Below, one piece after another: positions 8,292 through 58,599 of a stretch of DNA of 64,000 bases. A model generated the notes under the pieces. It worked only from the letters and a program-made list of their open reading frames with translations, was not told the DNA's origin and searched no databases. Location: IMG/VR virus record IMGVR_UViG_3300032268_000832, positions 186,001-250,000 of that record, one strand, 5' to 3'. Each line of letters opens with the position of its first letter. Within the stretch, counting starts at the first letter, position 1. Position numbers and translations under genes: made by a program.

Positions 8292-8642
8292 GGGGTTGGT
8301 TGGTTTTGATTGGGTATAGTCGTAAACTGTAAGCATGTAGTGCTAGATTGGAAGCACTTTAATCTGTCTATTAAACATTGAATTGACAACGATTTTATCG
8401 TATCTGAAAATTTCCTTGATGAAGCTGTAATGGTTTCTAACGGAGAGTTAGCAGTAGCTTAAAACTGCAAATAGTGGTAATCCACTTGATAGTGATAATT
8501 CACTAAATAATGGTACACCATTCATCTTTATTATTGGATGCCATCGATAATATATTCTGGCGCTAGAAGAAAAATTGTAGCTAAACATGTAGAAAACATT
8601 TGAAGAATACTCAAGACGCGGGTTCGATTCCCGTCAGCTCCT
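8292..8642 (+). ncRNA. ssrA: tmRNA; tag ORF 8385-8462 DNDFIVSENFLDEAVMVSNGELAVA*
   Basis: GGGGTTG/CAGCTCC acceptor with G3-U70, GACGCGGGTTCGATTCCCGT T arm, tag ending AVA-stop. Confidence 0.9.
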
Positions 8643-8787
8643 CGAGTACTTTTTTGGGTGTATTAGGTTAATTCTTATTATACTCAACTCTTTAAAAAGA
8701 TTCAGTTAATTTTACCGAAAACATACTGAAATAAAAACCCCTAGTAAATTGTCGCTTACTAGGGGTTTAACTTTTTAATGCAATACC

Positions 8788-9115: not shown

Positions 9116-9197
9116 AAAAAGTTGTAAAAAAACTTGACATGAGTCGAAACTTTTAGTATCTTTGCATATATTTATTACAATACGTTCTTAAACAACA

Positions 9198-9408
9198 TAT
9201 CTAAAAAGATGATTTCTGCAAACAGATATCTACAACTATGAGAAGGAGTAACTAGTCTCCATCGGACATTACTGACAACATTGAAATACCATGAGTCGCT
9301 ATTGTCACACGAAAGTGAAAAAAACTGGGAGTGTTGTGAGGACACTTTAAATCTACTACCGTGAGCACGTTAGTCACGTAAAACAAAGCGAACTATCATC
9401 TTGAGATA
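9198..9408 (+). ncRNA. Y-RNA-like element copy 2
   Basis: TATCT-AAA-AAGATGAT / ATCATCTT-G-AGATA stem then TTCTGCAA; promoter directly upstream. Confidence 0.6.
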
Positions 9409-9415
9409 ACTTATA

Positions 9416-9494
9416 TGGTTAAAGAATCTTTTCAGCAAACTAAAACTCTATTTTTAATTTGATAAAAAACACAGAAAAAAAGAGATTCTGACCA
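9416..9494 (+). ncRNA. Y-RNA-like element copy 3
   Basis: TGGT-TAA-AGAATCT / AGATTCT-G-ACCA stem then TTCAGCAA. Confidence 0.6.
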
Positions 9495-9497
9495 AAA

Positions 9498-9579
9498 GTG
9501 GTAGAAGTTAAGTCTTTATCTGAAAGATTGCCTTAAAAAGCATTTTCTAGGATAGCTGGTTCATAGCCAGCCTACCGCA
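9498..9579 (+). ncRNA. degenerate tRNA-like RNA
   Basis: acceptor GTGGTAG/CTACCGC and T arm GCTGG-TTCATAG-CCAGC; non-canonical D and anticodon arms. Confidence 0.5.
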
Positions 9580-9586
9580 CTAACAT

Positions 9587-10384: not shown

Positions 10385-10472
10385 CGCGGAATGGTGGAAA
10401 TGGTAACATGCTAGGCTCATAACCTAGAGGAGCAGTAACACTGTGTTGTAGGTTCGAATCCTACTTCCGCAA
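10385..10472 (+). tRNA. tRNA-Met(CAT) with C1:A72 mismatch and long variable arm
   Basis: CTAGG-CTCATAA-CCTAG; variable hairpin GCAG-TAACA-CTGT. Confidence 0.8.
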
Positions 10473-10473
10473 C

Positions 10474-13105: not shown

Positions 13106-13178
13106 GGTTCTATAGTATTAACGTGAATACGCCCGCCTCTAAAACGGAGAAATATCGGTTCGAGTCCGATTAGAACTA
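13106..13178 (+). tRNA. amber suppressor tRNA (anticodon CTA)
   Basis: acceptor GGTTCTA/TAGAACT, loop CTCTAAA, T arm ATCGG-TTCGAGT-CCGAT; anticodon stem only 3 bp. Confidence 0.7.
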
Positions 13179-13238
13179 CAAACACTTTACATTTTTTAGA
13201 AAAATGATATATTTATAAACAAAAAACAAATAGAACAA

Positions 13239-22428: not shown

Positions 22429-22785
22429 ATGAAAGTATTTTTTATTGCTTTTTTAATGTTTTCTTTATCGATTAAAGCCCAAAAACTAAAGAATGAATTA
22501 TTTACGTTTAATGTTGATTATACAAACAAAGAGTTTATAGTTAGGGTTGGTGATATAGATGAAAATAAATCACAAGTTGAAGTTGAAATTAAGTGTTCTA
22601 AAATAATTCTAGACTATAAAAAGGAAAAACATTTTGTGGAAGTTTTTAATATAAAACAACATGTTAATAATAGCAATGTTTTTTTTGGTGGTAAATTGAT
22701 TGAAGGTGAATATGTTATAACGTTAACATATGTTGAAAATGGTAAAAAAATAAAAAAAATAGAAAAAAAATTAATAAAAACTTGA
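22429..22785 (+). CDS. putative secreted protein
   Basis: signal peptide MKVFFIAFLMFSLSIKAQ. Confidence 0.6.
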   Translation: MKVFFIAFLMFSLSIKAQKLKNELFTFNVDYTNKEFIVRVGDIDENKSQVEVEIKCSKIILDYKKEKHFVEVFNIKQHVNNSNVFFGGKLIEGEYVITLTYVENGKKIKKIEKKLIKT

Positions 22786-22866
22786 CTTGTATTAAAATAG
22801 TTAGTATATTTGCATAACTTTTTAAAACAAGGATATATTTATAAACAAATACAAAAATAAAACAAA

Positions 22867-22968
22867 ATGAGAACAATTAACATACATATGATATCGATTT
22901 CGAATTGGAGACGCAATAGTCACCAAATGTCGGGTATGTCTAATTGCCAAGGTGGGACTGAAGTATAA
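22867..22968 (+). CDS. attenuator leader peptide 1 MRTINIHMISISNWRRNSHQMSGMSNCQGGTEV
   Basis: codons 4-19 are all read by tRNAs of the downstream cluster; contains antiterminator GTCGGGT (22929-22935). Confidence 0.85.
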   Translation: MRTINIHMISISNWRRNSHQMSGMSNCQGGTEV

Positions 22969-22993
22969 TTCAGAAACACATATAACAATACAC

Positions 22994-23027
22994 AACCCGA
23001 CTAGTTAAAAGCTTAGTCGGGTTTTTT
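22994..23027 (+). terminator. attenuator terminator 1
   Basis: AACCCGACTA..TAGTCGGGTT plus T-run. Confidence 0.85.
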
Positions 23028-24105: not shown

Positions 24106-24189
24106 TGTGATGTGGATGAATGGTTTAGTCACCAGCCTGATACGCTGGGTGTTTATAACACAATGTGGGTTCGAGTCCCACCGTCACAA
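24106..24189 (+). tRNA. tRNA-Ile(GAT) with long variable arm
   Basis: CCAGC-CTGATAC-GCTGG; variable hairpin GTGTT-TAT-AACAC. Confidence 0.8.
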
Positions 24190-24191
24190 CT

Positions 24192-24604: not shown

Positions 24605-24690
24605 TCTGGTTTGGCCGAGTGGACGATGGCAGCAGACTGTTAATCTGCTAGGGTACACCCTCAACGTAGGTTCGAATCCTACAGCCAGAG
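24605..24690 (+). tRNA. tRNA-Asn(GTT) with long variable arm
   Basis: GCAGA-CTGTTAA-TCTGC; variable hairpin AGGGT-AC-ACCCT. Confidence 0.8.
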
Positions 24691-24757
24691 CGAAAATTTT
24701 TTTGTTAATCTATTGACTTTTTGTTCGAATTTATTATATTTATAATAAAAACAAATT

Positions 24758-49168: not shown

Positions 49169-50392
49169 ATGAGCAAACAACTAACACACGAGTTTCTAGT
49201 AGAAAATGGGTTAATACTTTTTGAAACCATAATTGGTTCTCAAGCATATGGTACCCAAACACCTACTAGTGATGTAGACAAAAAATTCGTATACATATTA
49301 CCTATGGATTATATCTTGGGTACTGGATATGTTGAACAAATAAATGTAAATAAAGACTACACAGGTTGGGAACTTAGACGTTTCCTAGAATTAATGGAAA
49401 CAAACAACCCAACGGTTCTAGAACTTTTAAACAGCCCAGGAGACTGTATAATCAGCAAACACCCTTTGTTTGACCTAATCCTTGCACATAAGGAGGATTT
49501 CATAACAAAACTATGTAAAAATAGCTTTGGTGGATACGCTAGACAACAAATTGTTAAAGCTAAAGGTCTTAACAAGAAACAAAACTGGGAAAAAGACAAA
49601 GTAACTAGAAAAGACTTGTTAGATTTCTGTTATGTTATTCAAGGTGATAAATCAATCCCATGGAGAGCGTGGAATGCTAACAAATATGATGAAAAATTTG
49701 TTGGTGCTGTGAATATCCCAAATGCGAGAGATACCTACGCTTTATTTTATGACAGCGTTGCTGAAATGCTTCATTCTGAAAATACTGATGAAGAACTTAG
49801 AGAGACTTATAAAGAAGCACTGAGAAAAGCTGGTAAATCAATGGGTATGGGTTATAAAGGACTTATCAATACTGGTCATGAAGATGAAGATGGTAAGATT
49901 AACTACGGTATCTCAAATCAATTACGTCTTTCTAGCGTACCTAAAGGTGAGAAAGTTATTGCAACAATAGTGTATAACAAAGATGGTTATTCAGAACATT
50001 GTAAAGACTATAAAGAGTATCAAGAATGGCTTGAAAACCGTAACGAAGCTCGTTATGTTGAAACACAAGAACATGGGCAAAGAATTGATGGTAAGAATAT
50101 GATGCACTGTATGCGTCTTATCAGAATGGCAACAGAAATTGGTCAAGGTAAAGGGATTCAAGTAAGAAGAGAAGATAGAGAATATCTATTATCAATTCGT
50201 AGAGGTGAACTAGACTTAGATAAATTAATCGAAGAAGCGGATAATGCAATTAAAAATATGGATGAAGTTTTTGATAATTCCACTCTACCTGACAGAGTCC
50301 CTAAGGGTTTGGTAAATGCTCTTTTAGTTACTATCAGAAGAGAATTTTATGATTTGCCAATATCGGCAACAACACTTGAAAAAAGACTTTAA
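49169..50392 (+). CDS. Pol beta-like nucleotidyltransferase (YcgL/RlaP-like)
   Basis: GSQAYGTQTPTSDVD, NPTVLE, KNMMHCMRL. Confidence 0.8.
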   Translation: MSKQLTHEFLVENGLILFETIIGSQAYGTQTPTSDVDKKFVYILPMDYILGTGYVEQINVNKDYTGWELRRFLELMETNNPTVLELLNSPGDCIISKHPLFDLILAHKEDFITKLCKNSFGGYARQQIVKAKGLNKKQNWEKDKVTRKDLLDFCYVIQGDKSIPWRAWNANKYDEKFVGAVNIPNARDTYALFYDSVAEMLHSENTDEELRETYKEALRKAGKSMGMGYKGLINTGHEDEDGKINYGISNQLRLSSVPKGEKVIATIVYNKDGYSEHCKDYKEYQEWLENRNEARYVETQEHGQRIDGKNMMHCMRLIRMATEIGQGKGIQVRREDREYLLSIRRGELDLDKLIEEADNAIKNMDEVFDNSTLPDRVPKGLVNALLVTIRREFYDLPISATTLEKRL

Positions 50393-51265: not shown

Positions 51266-51853
51266 ATGAAAGACTTTATAAAAAATAGACTTAGAGAATC
51301 TTTAGAACATGAAGAAGATTTACAAGAAATAAATTGGAAAGGATTAGCCGCTGGTGCTGCTATGACGTTGGGTACGTTAGGTGCGCAAGGACAAACGACA
51401 GAACCAACTACACAAACACAAACACCAACAACTCAAACAACACAACAAAAACCAATGTTCGGTACACCAGAACAAAGAGCTGCTGCTAAGGCTAAAAGAG
51501 AAGCTCAACGTAAAAAGAATTTTGATATTTCTGTAAATAATGCTTATGGAATGGGATTTGTTGAAGATATTGAAGAAGAAGAATTTAACACTGGTTGTAA
51601 CATAGCCAATAATCAAGAATTAAAATATTTAGATGGTTCATCACCTGAATTCCCTAATTTTGTATATAGAGAAATGGAAGATGGTACCAAAGTTAAGATT
51701 AATATGAAAAAATATCTTAATTATATTAGAAAACAAAATAAACAAGCTGATGTGCCTTTAGATGGTTTACAAGGTCCTAATTTTAAATCAACAAAATGTG
51801 GTGTTTCTAAAGATGCTGCAAAACAAAGCAAAAGCGATTGGAGTAAAAAATAA
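51266..51853 (+). CDS. IKNRLRE-motif protein
   Basis: MKDFIKNRLRE; hydrophobic segment then Thr/Gln-rich linker. Confidence 0.65.
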   Translation: MKDFIKNRLRESLEHEEDLQEINWKGLAAGAAMTLGTLGAQGQTTEPTTQTQTPTTQTTQQKPMFGTPEQRAAAKAKREAQRKKNFDISVNNAYGMGFVEDIEEEEFNTGCNIANNQELKYLDGSSPEFPNFVYREMEDGTKVKINMKKYLNYIRKQNKQADVPLDGLQGPNFKSTKCGVSKDAAKQSKSDWSKK

Positions 51854-51894
51854 CCATTTTAATGGTTTTTTTAAAAAATCATATATTTATTATA

Positions 51895-51945
51895 AAAAAG
51901 TTGCAAAAAAACTTGACTTGTATTAAAACAGTTCGTATATTTGCA
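51895..51945 (+). promoter_or_regulatory. promoter of the Cys/Val/Leu tRNA operon
   Basis: AAAGTTGCAAAAAACTTGACTTGTATTAAAACAGTTCGTATATTTGCA, near-identical to 53493-53543. Confidence 0.75.
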
Positions 51946-51982
51946 TCGTATTAAATTTTAACGAAAAAAGAAACAAAACAAA

Positions 51983-52063
51983 ATGAGAAATACTTTTAAC
52001 ATATTAGTCCTTTTAAGCTTATGCTTGCTAGTGGTAAACACAGCAGGGCTTTGCGTATGTTAA
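51983..52063 (+). CDS. attenuator leader peptide 2 MRNTFNILVLLSLCLLVVNTAGLCVC
   Basis: 10 of codons 8-18 are Leu/Val/Cys; antiterminator GGGCTTT (52046-52052). Confidence 0.85.
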   Translation: MRNTFNILVLLSLCLLVVNTAGLCVC

Positions 52064-52093
52064 ACTCATCTGAATAAGATAAGTATCTCTCAC

Positions 52094-52125
52094 AAAAAGC
52101 CCATCCTAACCAGATGGGTTTTTTT
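52094..52125 (+). terminator. attenuator terminator 2
   Basis: AAAAAGCCCATC-CTAACCA-GATGGGTTTTTTT. Confidence 0.85.
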
Positions 52126-52138
52126 ATTGAATAATAAT

Positions 52139-52219
52139 GCCGTGGTTCCTGAGTGGTCAAAGGGGGCGGACTGCAAATCCGCTGCGAAAGCTTCGTGGGT
52201 TCGAATCCCTCTCACGGCT
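52139..52219 (+). tRNA. tRNA-Cys(GCA) with extended variable arm
   Basis: GCGGA-CTGCAAA-TCCGC; variable TGCGAAAGCTTC; U73. Confidence 0.85.
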
Positions 52220-52240
52220 CAATGATAAACTGAAAAAAAA

Positions 52241-52621
52241 ATGGAAGGTAAAGATTACTTAGTTGGTTCATTTAGAACCAAAAACGGTGCTCAAGTTAAC
52301 GTTTATAGAAATATTAAAAATATGGAAAAGAATGAAATTAAAAAGGACTTGTATAAGTCAAAGAATCTGGCTAAATTTAGCCACTATGTAAACGGAAACC
52401 TGTATTATAAGGTAGACGTGATGGACGGAACTTATCAGTTCCCAATAAAAACAGTACAGAAATCATATGTAATGGATACTAGACAAGTTGAAAAGATTCC
52501 AACACTAGTATTAGCAGAAGATTTAGGAACAACAAGTTTTGACGCTGAAATAAAGGGTTCTGAATTGATTAGATGGATTGAAAAAGCTATCGATAATGAA
52601 GATTTTATAAAAGTAGGGTAA
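52241..52621 (+). CDS. hypothetical protein
   Basis: ORF track. Confidence 0.65.
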   Translation: MEGKDYLVGSFRTKNGAQVNVYRNIKNMEKNEIKKDLYKSKNLAKFSHYVNGNLYYKVDVMDGTYQFPIKTVQKSYVMDTRQVEKIPTLVLAEDLGTTSFDAEIKGSELIRWIEKAIDNEDFIKVG

Positions 52622-52634
52622 AACCTACTTAAAT

Positions 52635-52723
52635 GGGACTATGGTGTAGTTGGTTAAACATCCCATCCTTACAAGATGGAGACGAGAAGTATAACGCTGG
52701 TTCGAATCCAGCTAGTCCTACCA
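52635..52723 (+). tRNA. tRNA-Val(TAC) with 16-nt variable region
   Basis: CCATC-CTTACAA-GATGG; encoded CCA. Confidence 0.8.
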
Positions 52724-52731
52724 AAATAAAT

Positions 52732-52818
52732 GGCCTTGTGGCGAAACTGGCAGTACGCACTAGACTTAAAATCTAGGGTCCCGAAGGGGGCGTGTGGGTT
52801 CGACTCCCACCAAGGCTA
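52732..52818 (+). tRNA. tRNA-Leu(TAA)
   Basis: CTAGA-CTTAAAA-TCTAG, long variable arm. Confidence 0.9.
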
Positions 52819-52826
52819 CACAATAT

Positions 52827-52909
52827 GCGGATATGGTGGAATGGTAGACACACTAGCCTTAGAAGCTAGGGCTCATTTGGGCATGCGAGTTCGAGTCTCG
52901 CTATCCGTA
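52827..52909 (+). tRNA. tRNA-Leu(TAG)
   Basis: CTAGC-CTTAGAA-GCTAG, long variable arm. Confidence 0.9.
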
Positions 52910-52915
52910 CAAATC

Positions 52916-52990
52916 GCATCTGTAACTCAGTGGTTCAGTAGTGCTTCCTTTACACGGAAGAAGTCGGGGGTTCGAATCCCTCCAGATGCA
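52916..52990 (+). tRNA. tRNA-Val(TAC)
   Basis: CTTCC-TTTACAC-GGAAG. Confidence 0.9.
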
Positions 52991-52992
52991 CT

Positions 52993-53083
52993 AAAAGATA
53001 GTTTCAGCAAACAAAAACTGGTTAAAAATTCACACTTAAAATGCGAACGAAGCGGTTCAAATCCGCAAAATATAACTATCTTG
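52993..53083 (+). ncRNA. Y-RNA-like element copy 5 with tRNA-derived cargo
   Basis: AAGATAGTT / AACTATCTT-G, TCAGCAA; internal CTTAAAA loop and T arm GCGG-TTCAAAT-CCGC. Confidence 0.65.
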
Positions 53084-53088
53084 TTTTT

Positions 53089-53172
53089 GGCCGAGTGGCG
53101 TAATTGGTAGCCGCGCCAGTCTAAGAAGCTGGTTCTCGAAAGGGAGTGTGGGTTCGAGTCCCACCTTGGTCA
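53089..53172 (+). tRNA. tRNA-Leu(AAG)
   Basis: CCAGT-CTAAGAA-GCTGG, long variable arm. Confidence 0.85.
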
Positions 53173-53201
53173 CAAATTGAAATATCAACATATTTATTAG
53201 T

Positions 53202-53492: not shown

Positions 53493-53543
53493 AAAAAAGT
53501 TGCAAAAAAACTTGACTTGTATTAAAACAGTTCGTATCTTTGC
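53493..53543 (+). promoter_or_regulatory. promoter of the Phe/Glu/Asp/Ala tRNA operon
   Basis: TTGACTTGTATTAAAACAGTTCGTATCTTTGCA. Confidence 0.75.
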
Positions 53544-53623
53544 ACTATAATTAAAAACAAAGAAAAAAAATGACTTTTTAAAAAAAGTCGCATATTTATA
53601 AACAAATACAAAAAGAAAACACA

Positions 53624-53713
53624 ATGAGAACTTTAACTAACATATTTGATTTCGCATTTTTTGCAGCCGAGGAGGATTACTCTTTCGGAAGGTCAAACAC
53701 TGTCATAAGTTAA
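53624..53713 (+). CDS. attenuator leader peptide 3 MRTLTNIFDFAFFAAEEDYSFGRSNTVIS
   Basis: codons 8-18 are all Phe/Asp/Ala/Glu; antiterminator AGGTCAAAC (53690-53698). Confidence 0.88.
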   Translation: MRTLTNIFDFAFFAAEEDYSFGRSNTVIS

Positions 53714-53738
53714 CGTTTAAATTAACGATATAAATGAT

Positions 53739-53768
53739 AAGTCTGACCTAATAAGTCAGACTTTTTTT
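53739..53768 (+). terminator. attenuator terminator 3
   Basis: AAGTCTGAC-CTAATAA-GTCAGACTTTTTTT. Confidence 0.85.
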
Positions 53769-53783
53769 ATGCAATAAATAATT

Positions 53784-53865: not shown

Positions 53866-53940
53866 GGCCCCGTCTTCTAAACGGAATAGGAAGCCACCCT
53901 TTCAAGGTGTGTAATGCGAGTTCGAGTCTCGTCAGGGCTA
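53866..53940 (+). tRNA. tRNA-Glu(TTC)
   Basis: CACC-CTTTCAA-GGTG. Confidence 0.85.
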
Positions 53941-53977
53941 CAATCTGGTTAAGATTCCAGTAATCAAAAATCTAAAT

Positions 53978-58282: not shown

Positions 58283-58428
58283 TAGGTAAAGAAAGATTAT
58301 TTCAGCAATTTAAATCAACAGCCTCCTAAGCTCGTGGTCGCAGGTTCGAATCCTGTCTAGTTTTTCCTAGGAAAAGCAAGTAGCTCAGTTGGATAGAGCA
58401 CGTATGAAAAAATTAATCTTGTTACCTA
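58283..58428 (+). ncRNA. Y-RNA-like element copy 6 containing a circularly permuted tRNA-Arg(CCT)
   Basis: TAGGTAA-AGA-AAGATTA / TAATCTT-G-TTACCTA, TTCAGCAA; internal order is anticodon arm, T arm, closed acceptor, D arm. Confidence 0.75.
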
Positions 58429-58431
58429 CAT

Positions 58432-58507
58432 ATGAGGATAGCTCAGTTGGTAGAGCGCTCGGTGGTTCGCTGCCGAGAGGTTGCAGGTTCGAGTCCTGCT
58501 CCTTGTA
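58432..58507 (+). ncRNA. tRNA-like RNA with the anticodon loop replaced by a UUCG tetraloop
   Basis: canonical D and T arms; CTCGGTGG-TTCG-CTGCCGAG. Confidence 0.7.
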
Positions 58508-58599
58508 CAAAAAAATTTTTAACTATTATTTAACAAAAAAATTTTGTAGTTACAAAAATACTTAGTATATTTGCATTGTAAAACATAAACAATAACAAA

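What the first reader, a model, noticed from the sequence alone, without database searches (positions are those of the whole stretch)
51983..53172. Attenuator 2: Leu/Val/Cys leader before Cys, Val and Leu tRNAs
Codons 8-18 are TTA GTC CTT TTA AGC TTA TGC TTG CTA GTG GTA. They sample all three Leu isoacceptors encoded downstream (TAA, TAG, AAG) plus Val and Cys. GGGCTTT (52046) pairs with AAAGCCC (52096) of the terminator.
Basis: partly seen in the sequence, partly recalled or inferred. Interest (0 to 1): 0.85.

Follow-up and report, generated by a model that had tools for sequence, protein, structure and literature searches.

The report
Leader-peptide attenuator guarding phage tRNA genes
A 26-codon mini-gene and a transcription stop signal sit in front of a phage's Cys, Val and Leu tRNA genes and appear to release those genes only when ribosomes read Leu, Val and Cys codons slowly; this control logic is known for amino-acid synthesis genes, and I found no report of it for tRNA genes.

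Summary

- **Layout at the finding.** The window comes from a 306 kb Bacteroidota-type jumbo phage. A conserved promoter is followed by ORF 51983-52063 (MRNTFNILVLLSLCLLVVNTAGLCVC). An intrinsic terminator lies at 52094-52125. tRNA-Cys starts 13 nt later and is followed by Val, Leu, Leu, Val and Leu.
- **Antiterminator.** GGGCTTT (52046) is complementary to AAAGCCC (52096).
- **Sister elements.** Taken alone, this leader is only modestly significant. It is one of four paralogous leaders in the genome. Their core residues split the 20 amino acids into four sets, and each set is exactly the tRNA set downstream of that leader.
- **Codon sampling.** Every sense anticodon in each cluster (25 of 25) is sampled by its own leader.
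- **Other phages.** In relatives with different tRNA groupings, in huge phage LR745206.1 and in Prevotella megaphage Lak-A1, leader composition follows the local tRNA content. Across 14 leader-cluster pairs, 0 of 200,000 random pairings reached the observed score.
- **Folding.** An ORF segment pairs with the terminator's 5' arm in nearly all leaders, with different sequences in each. Nascent-RNA folding predicts antitermination only when a ribosome lingers in the early codons.
- **Literature.** Nine searches found no prior description.

The parts
51912..51943 (+). Conserved promoter, CTTGACTTGTATTAAAACAGTTCGTATATTTG. Its TAtaTTTG -7 box is of the Bacteroidota type.
   Evidence: The same 32-nt motif precedes all four leaders of the genome. 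Looser copies occur at 9 places. Exact copies occur in related IMG/VR phages. The assignment to the Bacteroidota promoter type rests on my knowledge of the TTG/TAnnTTTG consensus.
51983..52063 (+). Leader ORF, 26 codons, MRNTFNILVLLSLCLLVVNTAGLCVC. It is the first ATG after the promoter and has an A-rich 5' UTR.
   Evidence: The ORF is conserved in relatives.
52004..52036 (+). Regulatory codons 8-18: Leu x6, Val x3, Cys x1 and one non-cognate Ser.
   Evidence: The enrichment is specific to this reading frame.
52006..52011 (+). Region 1 (AGTCCT, codons 8-10). It pairs with region 2 when no ribosome covers it.
   Evidence: MFE helix 52006-52011:52045-52050.
52045..52052 (+). Region 2 (AGGGCTTT, codons 21-24). 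It pairs either with region 1 or with the terminator's 5' arm (antiterminator).
   Evidence: In the B-type alignment one pair changes from C:G to U:A, a compensatory change.
52094..52125 (+). Intrinsic terminator: stem 52094-52105:52113-52124 followed by a run of 7 T. Its 5' arm contains AAAGCCC (region 3).
52139..52220 (+). tRNA-Cys (GCA), 82 nt, with a long variable arm. It starts 13 nt after the T run, which leaves no room for a promoter of its own.
52241..52621 (+). 126-aa ORF of unknown function embedded in the tRNA cluster.
   Evidence: No Pfam match. Also present in relatives.
52635..53173 (+). tRNA-Val(TAC), Leu(TAA), Leu(TAG), Val(TAC) and Leu(AAG).
22781..23027 (+). Sister attenuator A: promoter, ORF 22867-22968 (MRTINIHMISISNWRRNSHQMSGMSNCQGGTEV) and terminator. 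It precedes tRNA Ser, His, Trp, Ile, Ile, Met, Asn, Asn, Arg, Arg, Ser.
53511..53770 (+). Sister attenuator C: promoter, ORF 53624-53713 (MRTLTNIFDFAFFAAEEDYSFGRSNTVIS) and terminator. It precedes tRNA Phe, a TCA-anticodon tRNA, Glu, Asp, Ala.

Best explanation
This is a ribosome-mediated (leader-peptide) transcription attenuator whose regulated genes are tRNA genes.

**Proposed sequence of events.**
1. Transcription starts at the conserved promoter near 51950 and a ribosome begins translating the 26-codon leader.
2. If the Leu, Val and Cys codons are decoded quickly, the ribosome reaches codons 16 to stop. It then covers region 2 (52045-52052) while RNA polymerase makes the terminator. The hairpin 52094-52124 forms and transcription stops 13 nt before tRNA-Cys.
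3. If decoding of these codons is slow, because the matching tRNAs are scarce, uncharged or destroyed, the ribosome lingers over region 1. Region 2 is left free and pairs with the terminator's 5' arm (GGGCUUU:AAAGCCC). The terminator cannot form and the Cys/Val/Leu tRNA cluster is transcribed.
4. Without any ribosome, region 1 pairs with region 2 and termination follows.

**Net effect.** The result is negative feedback: the phage makes a given module of tRNAs when decoding by exactly those tRNAs is limiting. The genome carries four such modules, which together cover all 20 amino acids.

**Shown.** The sequence layout, the codon/tRNA correspondence, the covariation across phages, and the complementary segments.

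**Inferred.** Translation of the ORF, terminator function, coupling of the ribosome to RNA polymerase, and the direction of the response.
For: **Layout.** Promoter, ORF, terminator, then the first tRNA 13 nt later.

**Four paralogous leaders in one genome.**
- The amino-acid sets are disjoint and sum to 20. Each equals the tRNA set downstream: HIMNRSW, CLV, ADEF and GKPQTY.
- Core residues 4-19 that fall in the cognate set: 16/16, 10/16, 11/16 and 15/16.
- Leaders A, C and D are the top outliers among 1138 small ORFs of the genome.
- The enrichment exists only in the ORF frame.
- 25 of 25 sense anticodon species are sampled by their own leader.

**Other phages with other tRNA groupings.** Leader composition follows the local tRNA content in:
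- G001, leaders F, G and H;
- G004, leader E;
- LR745206.1, four leaders;
- Lak-A1, two leaders.

The cognate pairing is the single best of 40,320 permutations for 8 pairs. For 14 pairs, 0 of 200,000 random pairings reached it.

**Antiterminator.**
- A 6-11 bp segment complementary to the terminator's 5' arm lies just 3' of the regulatory codons. This holds in most of the 16 IMG/VR-family leaders, where it sits at about codons 19-26. It also holds in the 8 LR745206.1, Lak-A1, G001-H and G003-B6 leaders, where it sits at codons 19-34.
- The sequence differs in each leader.
- Mean z is -2.0 against dinucleotide shuffles.
- One pair in the B-type alignment changes from C:G to U:A.

**Nascent-transcript folding with a ribosome footprint.** For this leader the antiterminator probability is 0.02 without a ribosome, 0.6 with the ribosome at codons 1-15, and 0.0 from codon 16 to the stop. 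The same step appears in 19 other leaders.

**Peptide versus RNA.** In relatives the C-terminal peptide is frame-shifted while the RNA stays conserved.
Against: - There is no experimental or transcript evidence. The one metatranscriptome that held part of the stretch covered only a tRNA.
- Equilibrium folding of the complete leader always keeps the terminator, so the model needs kinetic, co-transcriptional competition, as for trp.
- For this leader alone the statistics are modest: an in-set run of 6, and antiterminator p about 0.02-0.04.
- In several sister leaders (A, F, B2, B3) the antiterminator is predicted to form even without a ribosome. In A, D and F region 2 is uncovered again when the ribosome reaches the stop codon.
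- The complementarity is weak in leaders C4, E and G.
- Whether transcription and translation are coupled in the (unknown) Bacteroidota host is not known.
Confidence: 0.8

Rival explanations
1. The leader is translated and senses decoding speed, but the output is not hairpin competition at an intrinsic terminator. Possible outputs are Rho-type termination after ribosome uncoupling, which could reverse the polarity, or control of processing or stability of the tRNA precursor.
For: - The codon/tRNA correspondence demands only a translation-based sensor, not a particular output.
- Antiterminator complementarity is weak in some leaders.
- Equilibrium folds always keep the terminator.
Against: - A canonical hairpin plus T run lies 13 nt before the first tRNA in leaders B, C and D.
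- The segment complementary to the terminator arm recurs, with different sequence, in distant phages.
- Reversed polarity would give positive feedback, which makes little regulatory sense.
Confidence: 0.1
2. The ORF encodes a small hydrophobic membrane peptide with its own terminator. Its Leu/Val/Cys richness only reflects hydrophobicity, and the tRNAs are expressed independently.
For: - Taken alone, leader B resembles many Leu/Val-rich small ORFs of this AT-rich genome. Its in-set run of 6 is beaten by other small ORFs.
- The peptide is hydrophobic.
Against: - The three sister leaders are not hydrophobic, yet they mirror their tRNA sets.
- The correspondence holds in 14 leader-cluster pairs.
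- The C-terminal third is frame-shifted in relatives while the nucleotides are conserved.
- There is no room for a promoter between the terminator and tRNA-Cys.
Confidence: 0.03
3. The leader RNA binds tRNAs directly, in the manner of a T-box, through codon-anticodon pairing and without a ribosome.
For: The codons match the downstream anticodons.
Against: - There is no T-box or other Rfam match.
- The cognate codons are in phase within an ATG-to-stop ORF, and the enrichment vanishes in the other two frames.
- Many different codons in a row do not fit a single specifier loop.
Confidence: 0.02

Closest known systems
Leader-peptide attenuators of enterobacterial amino-acid operons (trpL, hisL, leuL, thrL, ilvL/ivbL, pheL)
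   Same: Both have a short ORF with regulatory codons, followed by an intrinsic terminator. Both use three overlapping pairings: 1:2, 2:3 (antiterminator) and 3:4 (terminator). A slow ribosome gives readthrough. ilvL and thrL also sense several amino acids at once.
   Different: Here the regulated genes are tRNA genes, not biosynthetic enzymes. The leader samples up to 7-14 different amino acids, and every isoacceptor encoded downstream, instead of a run of one or two codons. The element is phage-borne and repeated as modules. It has no sequence or Rfam similarity to those families (Phe_leader 20 bits and Thr_leader 16 bits, against a 55-bit cut-off).
pheST (pheM leader) attenuation of an aminoacyl-tRNA synthetase operon
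   Same: It is a leader-peptide attenuator that controls a component of the translation apparatus by sensing charged-tRNA supply.
   Different: It controls a synthetase for one amino acid in a bacterial chromosome, not tRNA genes. This comparison rests on my knowledge and was not tested here.
T-box riboswitches
   Same: Both couple transcription readthrough at a terminator/antiterminator switch to the state of particular tRNAs.
   Different: A T-box binds one uncharged tRNA directly, without translation, and has a conserved fold. No such fold is present here, and the signal is read in a reading frame.
Candidate Trp leader-peptide attenuators of Bacteroidetes (the 'Bacteroid-trp' motif, recalled from memory)
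   Same: They are a precedent that ribosome-mediated attenuation may operate in the host phylum.
   Different: They lie upstream of trp biosynthesis genes in bacteria. No match was found in this window at Rfam gathering thresholds.

Membership tests
Ribosome-mediated (leader-peptide) transcription attenuators | A short ORF lies in the transcribed leader, between the promoter and the regulated genes. | tested here: met
   ORF 51983-52063 is the first ATG after the conserved promoter 51912-43. It is conserved in relatives.
Ribosome-mediated (leader-peptide) transcription attenuators | Regulatory codons are enriched and cognate to what the operon supplies. | tested here: met
   10 of 11 codons 8-18 are Leu, Val or Cys, and all 5 downstream anticodons are sampled. 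Across 14 leader-cluster pairs no random pairing matched the observed score.
Ribosome-mediated (leader-peptide) transcription attenuators | An intrinsic terminator lies between the leader ORF and the first regulated gene. | tested here: met
   Hairpin 52094-52124 plus a run of 7 T; the first tRNA starts 13 nt later. Its function as a terminator was not tested.
Ribosome-mediated (leader-peptide) transcription attenuators | Mutually exclusive antiterminator (2:3) and anti-antiterminator (1:2) pairings exist, placed so that ribosome position decides between them. | tested here: met
   The 1:2 helix is 52006-11:52045-50 and the 2:3 helix is 52046-52:52096-52102. In nascent-RNA folds the antiterminator probability is 0.02 with no ribosome, 0.6 with the ribosome at codons 1-15, and 0.0 at codons 16 and beyond. 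Region 2 complementarity recurs with different sequences. Single-leader significance is modest.
Ribosome-mediated (leader-peptide) transcription attenuators | Readthrough depends on translation of the leader and on charged-tRNA supply. | not testable with these tools
   This needs reporter or in-vitro assays. The one RNA run available was uninformative.
Ribosome-mediated (leader-peptide) transcription attenuators | The regulated genes are amino-acid biosynthesis or aminoacyl-tRNA synthetase genes (as in all described members I know of). | tested here: not met
   The downstream genes are six tRNAs and one ORF of unknown function. This is the respect in which the element is a new variant.
Rfam leader families (Leu_leader, Thr_leader, Phe_leader, His_leader, Trp_leader) | A covariance-model score at or above the family's gathering threshold. 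| tested here: not met
   The best matches are Phe_leader at 20.2 bits and Thr_leader at 15.6 bits, both against a 55-bit cut-off. Nothing reached gathering in this region.
T-box riboswitch | A conserved T-box fold with specifier loop and discriminator (Rfam model). | tested here: not met
   No match, even at E-value up to 10, in 51850-52140.

The most novel reading that the evidence does not exclude
Bacteroidota jumbo and mega phages, including the gut Lak phages, split their tRNA genes into modules. Each module is placed behind a 'codon-barcode' leader peptide that samples exactly the tRNAs encoded downstream. Each module would then be transcribed on demand, when decoding by those tRNAs becomes limiting, for example after codon-usage mismatch, host shut-off or tRNA-cleaving host defence. 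This would be the first leader-peptide attenuation of tRNA genes. It would also be a sensor of tRNA supply rather than of amino-acid supply.
Probability: 0.72. Interest if true: 0.92.

Novelty: new variant of a known kind. Interest (0 to 1): 0.9.

Why it matters
Why phages carry tRNA genes, and how those genes are expressed, is an open question.

- **What it would show.** A built-in decoding-speed sensor in front of each tRNA module would mean phages regulate tRNA supply homeostatically and per amino-acid group.
- **Testable link.** It would connect phage tRNAs directly to tRNA depletion during infection, in a way that can be tested.
- **Extension of a textbook mechanism.** Attenuation would gain a new class of target and a new design: many different codons sampled once or twice, effectively a timed track, rather than a run of one codon.
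- **Practical uses.** It gives a simple sequence rule for annotating operon boundaries in tRNA arrays of huge phages. It also provides compact natural parts that report decoding capacity for chosen codon sets.

Tried and rejected
- **Equilibrium folding of the complete leader with a ribosome footprint at each codon.** The terminator is always predicted, so this test cannot discriminate. I replaced it with folding of the nascent transcript before the 3' arm exists.
- **Rfam at gathering and at permissive thresholds.** No family matched. The leader is not a known sRNA or leader family.
- **Direct transcript evidence.** One metatranscriptome held 5% of the sampled words. Its only contig covered tRNA-Val 52916-53007 and came from a relative. 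This is uninformative.
- **BLAST of the region and of other leader types against cultured-phage records.** Only tRNA matches came back. No cultured phage with these leaders was found.
- **Tenacibaculum phage PTm1.** It is the nearest cultured phage by one protein, but it has no tRNA genes.
- **Other tRNAs of the window.** Met 9587 and 10385, CTA 13106, Cys 13846, Phe 57769 and the 8-nt-loop tRNA 58432 have promoter copies but no leader ORF plus terminator. They are not part of this system.
- **Longest-run statistic for leader B alone.** It is not significant, so the case for B rests on the family.
- **Cognate versus non-cognate duplex matrix.** It is noisy because many terminator arms share AACCC. 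Shuffles and position consistency were more useful.
- **Literature (papers read).** Nine full-text searches and three papers gave no description of leader peptides before tRNA genes. The 2025 review 'Phage tRNAs: decoding the enigma' is not held, so it could not be checked.
Full report
**1. The observation**

- The ORF runs from ATG 51983 to TAA 52063 and encodes MRNTFNILVLLSLCLLVVNTAGLCVC.
- ARAGORN and Rfam agree on six downstream tRNAs. They are Cys-GCA (52139), Val-TAC (52635), Leu-TAA (52732), Leu-TAG (52827), Val-TAC (52916) and Leu-AAG (53089).
- GGGCTTT begins at 52046. AAAGCCC begins at 52096, inside the 5' arm of a hairpin (52094-52105:52113-52124) that is followed by seven T.
- tRNA-Cys starts 13 nt after the T run.
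- The leader region folds much better than shuffled versions (z = -4.7).

**2. Context**

- The window is bases 186001-250000 of a 306 kb IMG/VR phage record with 31% G+C and 38 tRNA genes.
- The 32-nt motif at 51912-51943 ends in TATATTTG. I recognise this as the Bacteroidota -7 box, from my own knowledge.
- The motif is repeated before each large tRNA cluster. Looser copies occur at nine places in the genome.
- A neighbouring gene carries a type IX secretion sorting domain, and another is an RlaP-type RNA-repair nucleotidyltransferase. Together with the promoter type, the type IX secretion sorting domain points to a Bacteroidota host.
- The upstream gene ends at 51853, so the terminator at 52094 belongs to the leader transcript.

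**3. Sister elements in the same genome**

The same layout occurs four times: conserved promoter, an ORF of 26-33 codons starting ATGA(A/G)AA, a terminator, then tRNAs.

| Leader | Position | Peptide | tRNAs downstream |
|---|---|---|---|
| A | window 22867-22968 | MRTINIHMISISNWRRNSHQMSGMSNCQGGTEV | Ser His Trp Ile Ile Met Asn Asn Arg Arg Ser |
| B | the finding | MRNTFNILVLLSLCLLVVNTAGLCVC | Cys Val Leu Leu Val Leu |
| C | window 53624-53713 | MRTLTNIFDFAFFAAEEDYSFGRSNTVIS | Phe, a TCA-anticodon tRNA, Glu Asp Ala |
| D | outside the window, G000:251079-251180 | MKTQTTYQTQYQPKGGKPFRSTGCVMFSDLTTI | Pro Lys Lys Pro Gly Gln Tyr Thr Gly |

- The four tRNA sets are disjoint and together make all 20 amino acids.
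- Residues 4-19 fall in the cognate set 16/16 (A), 10/16 (B), 11/16 (C) and 15/16 (D). They almost never fall in the other three sets.
- Among 1138 small ORFs of the genome, A, C and D have by far the longest in-set runs (16, 11 and 17). B does not (run of 6), because hydrophobic Leu/Val-rich ORFs are common in this genome.
- The enrichment exists only in the ORF frame.
- By strict wobble, every sense anticodon species of each cluster is sampled within codons 2-22 of its own leader, 25 of 25. Only the TCA-anticodon tRNA is not sampled.

**4. Covariation across phages**

Two pattern scans of IMG/VR gave close and more distant relatives. Where the tRNAs are grouped differently, the leader differs accordingly.

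| Phage | Leader peptide | tRNAs downstream |
|---|---|---|
| G004 and relatives | MRTSINHISNSVQPQFKNCWSADSYGSGGIS | Gln Phe His Arg Ser Asp Pro Met Ile Asn Lys Val Cys Trp |
| G001 | MKTLTNISLFTLTQVFMVQLQTVFGFGVSNVS | Gln Thr Phe Thr Val Leu Leu Met |
| G001 | MKTNNNIHNINISRNSWITKMTRCV | Asn Ser Ser Ile Arg |
| G001 | MITNKPTYKPSDAKAGTDCGYNHNCRDLRY | Tyr Pro Asp Gly Ala Cys Lys |
| LR745206.1 | MTTNSTHKNFSKSHKWFSNQSFGTESVLSLN | His Phe Trp Lys Arg Ser |
| LR745206.1 | MNTITNIASYESYYEEGNLVRRNNYVVM | Glu Tyr Ile Gly Met |
| LR745206.1 | MTTMNLNMTMNLTLNVVNITLCNIRPTEGSDLFREIVM | Asn Arg Leu Val Ile Thr Met |
| LR745206.1 | MKTINVNIAPVNPQPQDQDPMRKANYVFMIS | Pro Asp Gln |
| Lak-A1 | MKTLNMTYGMHPVCGMVHMFPCGGGRPM... 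| His Pro Arg Arg Gly Cys Met |
| Lak-A1 | MRQFNNIYKNNVDIYADSFNWYEQVR... | a 14-amino-acid array |

- LR745206.1 is a published 635 kb huge phage. I reached it through a shared RlaP-like protein. Its source paper assigns it to a Bacteroidetes-infecting clade (PMC7162821).
- Lak-A1 (MK250016.1) is a Prevotella megaphage.
- For eight pairs, the cognate pairing is the single best of 40,320 permutations.
- For 14 pairs, none of 200,000 random pairings reaches the observed score. The cognate set ranks first for 12 of the 14 leaders.

**5. RNA switch**

- **Region 2 in the first 16 leaders.** In most of the 16 representative IMG/VR-family leaders a 6-11 nt segment is complementary to the terminator's 5' arm. 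It sits at about codons 19-26, just after the regulatory codons. The exceptions are C3, C4 and E.
- **Region 2 in eight further leaders.** The four LR745206.1 leaders, the two Lak-A1 leaders, G001-H and G003-B6 show the same complementarity, at codons 19-34.
- **Different sequences.** Examples are:
  - GUCGGGU/ACCCGAC
  - GGGCUUU/AAAGCCC
  - ACUGGGU/ACCCAGU
  - GGAUUGG/CCAAUCC
  - AUUCGGGUU/AACCCGAAU
  - GUCAGAC/GUCUGAC
  - CUGAGGGUU/AACCCUCAG
  - UACUUGAG/CUCAAGUA

- **Compensatory change.** Within B-type leaders one pair changes from C:G to U:A.
- **Significance.** Against dinucleotide shuffles each leader is only modestly significant. B has z = -2.0 and p about 0.02-0.04. The mean z over 16 leaders is -2.0. 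Three leaders (C4, E, G) are weak.
- **Complete leader.** Equilibrium folding always keeps the terminator. As in trp, any switch must be kinetic.
- **Nascent transcript, leader B.** I folded the transcript up to the terminator loop with a 28-nt ribosome footprint.

| Ribosome position | Antiterminator probability |
|---|---|
| no ribosome | 0.02 |
| codons 1-15 | 0.6 |
| codon 16 to stop | 0.0 |

- In the minimum-energy folds GGGCUUU:AAAGCCC is present with the A site at codons 8-14, and is absent otherwise.
- The other 19 leaders show the same drop once the ribosome passes roughly codons 16-27.
- In several leaders the antiterminator is also predicted without a ribosome, or re-forms when the ribosome sits at a distant stop codon. 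The 'no translation' state and the timing are therefore not settled.

**6. Peptide versus RNA**

- Relatives of leader B (L011, L050) carry a 1-nt deletion after codon 17 and a second one near the stop.
- The C-terminal peptide therefore changes from VVNTAGLCVC to VETQLGFLCVN, while the nucleotides, including region 2, stay conserved.
- Among D-type leaders the same amino acids recur in a different order.
- Selection therefore acts on codon content and on the RNA, not on a peptide sequence.

**7. Mechanism**

The best reading is classical ribosome-mediated attenuation applied to tRNA genes.
- Fast decoding of the module's own codons lets the ribosome cover region 2, and the terminator forms.
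- Slow decoding leaves region 2 free to pair with the terminator arm, and the tRNA module is transcribed.
- Because many different codons are each sampled once or twice, the leader behaves as a timed track. Its transit time sums the waiting times for all tRNAs of the module.
- The output is negative feedback on tRNA supply.
- Shown: the layout, the correspondence, the covariation and the complementary segments.
- Inferred: translation, termination, ribosome-polymerase coupling, and the polarity of the response.

**8. Comparison with known systems**

- The logic is that of the trpL, hisL, leuL, thrL, ilvL and pheL leaders and of the pheST leader (my knowledge).
- The element matches no Rfam leader family and no T-box.
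- Its targets are tRNA genes.
- Nine full-text searches found no description of leader peptides before tRNA genes. Three papers were also read and contain none: a survey of attenuators (PMC2965389), the huge-phage paper (PMC7162821) and a 2026 jumbo-phage review (PMC13282480).
- One relevant 2025 review is not held.
- I therefore rate the element a new variant of a known kind.

**9. Caveats**

- All evidence is computational.
- The host is unknown.
- No cultured phage with these leaders was found.
- Amino-acid identities of some tRNAs are uncertain, because several have unusually long variable arms.
- tRNA cluster boundaries in other phages were set by gaps and by the next leader.
- Background amino-acid frequencies were taken from this genome for all phages.

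Noticed in passing
window 52139-52220, 52635-52723, 10385-10473, 24106-24190, 24605-24691; G000:251254-251349: Several tRNAs with Cys, Val, Met, Ile, Asn or Pro anticodons are 82-96 nt long. In the two examined, the extra bases form a long variable arm of the kind normally restricted to Leu, Ser and Tyr tRNAs. Relatives have a normal-sized tRNA-Cys at the same position.
   Followed up: partly
window 13106-13179 and 53866-53941: There are tRNAs with CTA and TCA anticodons, which would read the TAG and TGA stop codons. This may mean stop-codon recoding in part of the genome. The TCA tRNA sits in cluster C but has no matching codon in leader C.
   Followed up: partly
window 58432-58508; G000:286683-286759; L011, L035, L058: tRNA-like genes have an 8-nt anticodon loop. 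ARAGORN reports four-base 'anticodons' ttcg, gagg and agac. They recur in relatives at the end of the Phe/Glu/Asp/Ala module.
   Followed up: no
window 8292-8645: The phage encodes a tmRNA (Rfam RF00023, 72 bits).
   Followed up: no
window 58320-58430: There are pieces that look like tRNA 3' and 5' halves, just upstream of the 8-nt-loop tRNA.
   Followed up: no
window 52995-53085: Between tRNA-Val and tRNA-Leu(AAG) lies a stretch with acceptor-like and T-arm-like pairings (AGATAGTT...AACTATCT, GCGGTTCAAATCCGC). Neither ARAGORN nor Rfam calls it.
   Followed up: partly
window 9140-9586: A promoter copy is followed by about 440 nt without a convincing ORF or terminator, then tRNA-Met. This may be an unknown RNA. 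There is no Rfam match.
   Followed up: partly
window 22836-22850, 53592-53606; G000:251050-251064; many loci: A second conserved motif, ATATTTATAAACAA, lies between the promoter and the start codon of leaders A, C and D but not B. In relatives it also precedes ordinary protein genes. It may be a second, phage-specific promoter or a 5' UTR element.
   Followed up: partly
window 49169-50392: An RlaP-family nucleotidyltransferase, associated with RNA repair, lies next to the tRNA modules. Its closest relatives are in huge Bacteroidota phages and Lak phages.
   Followed up: partly
L062 3560-5210 (LR745206.1): Long ORFs are embedded within a tRNA module of the huge phage. I did not examine them.
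   Followed up: no
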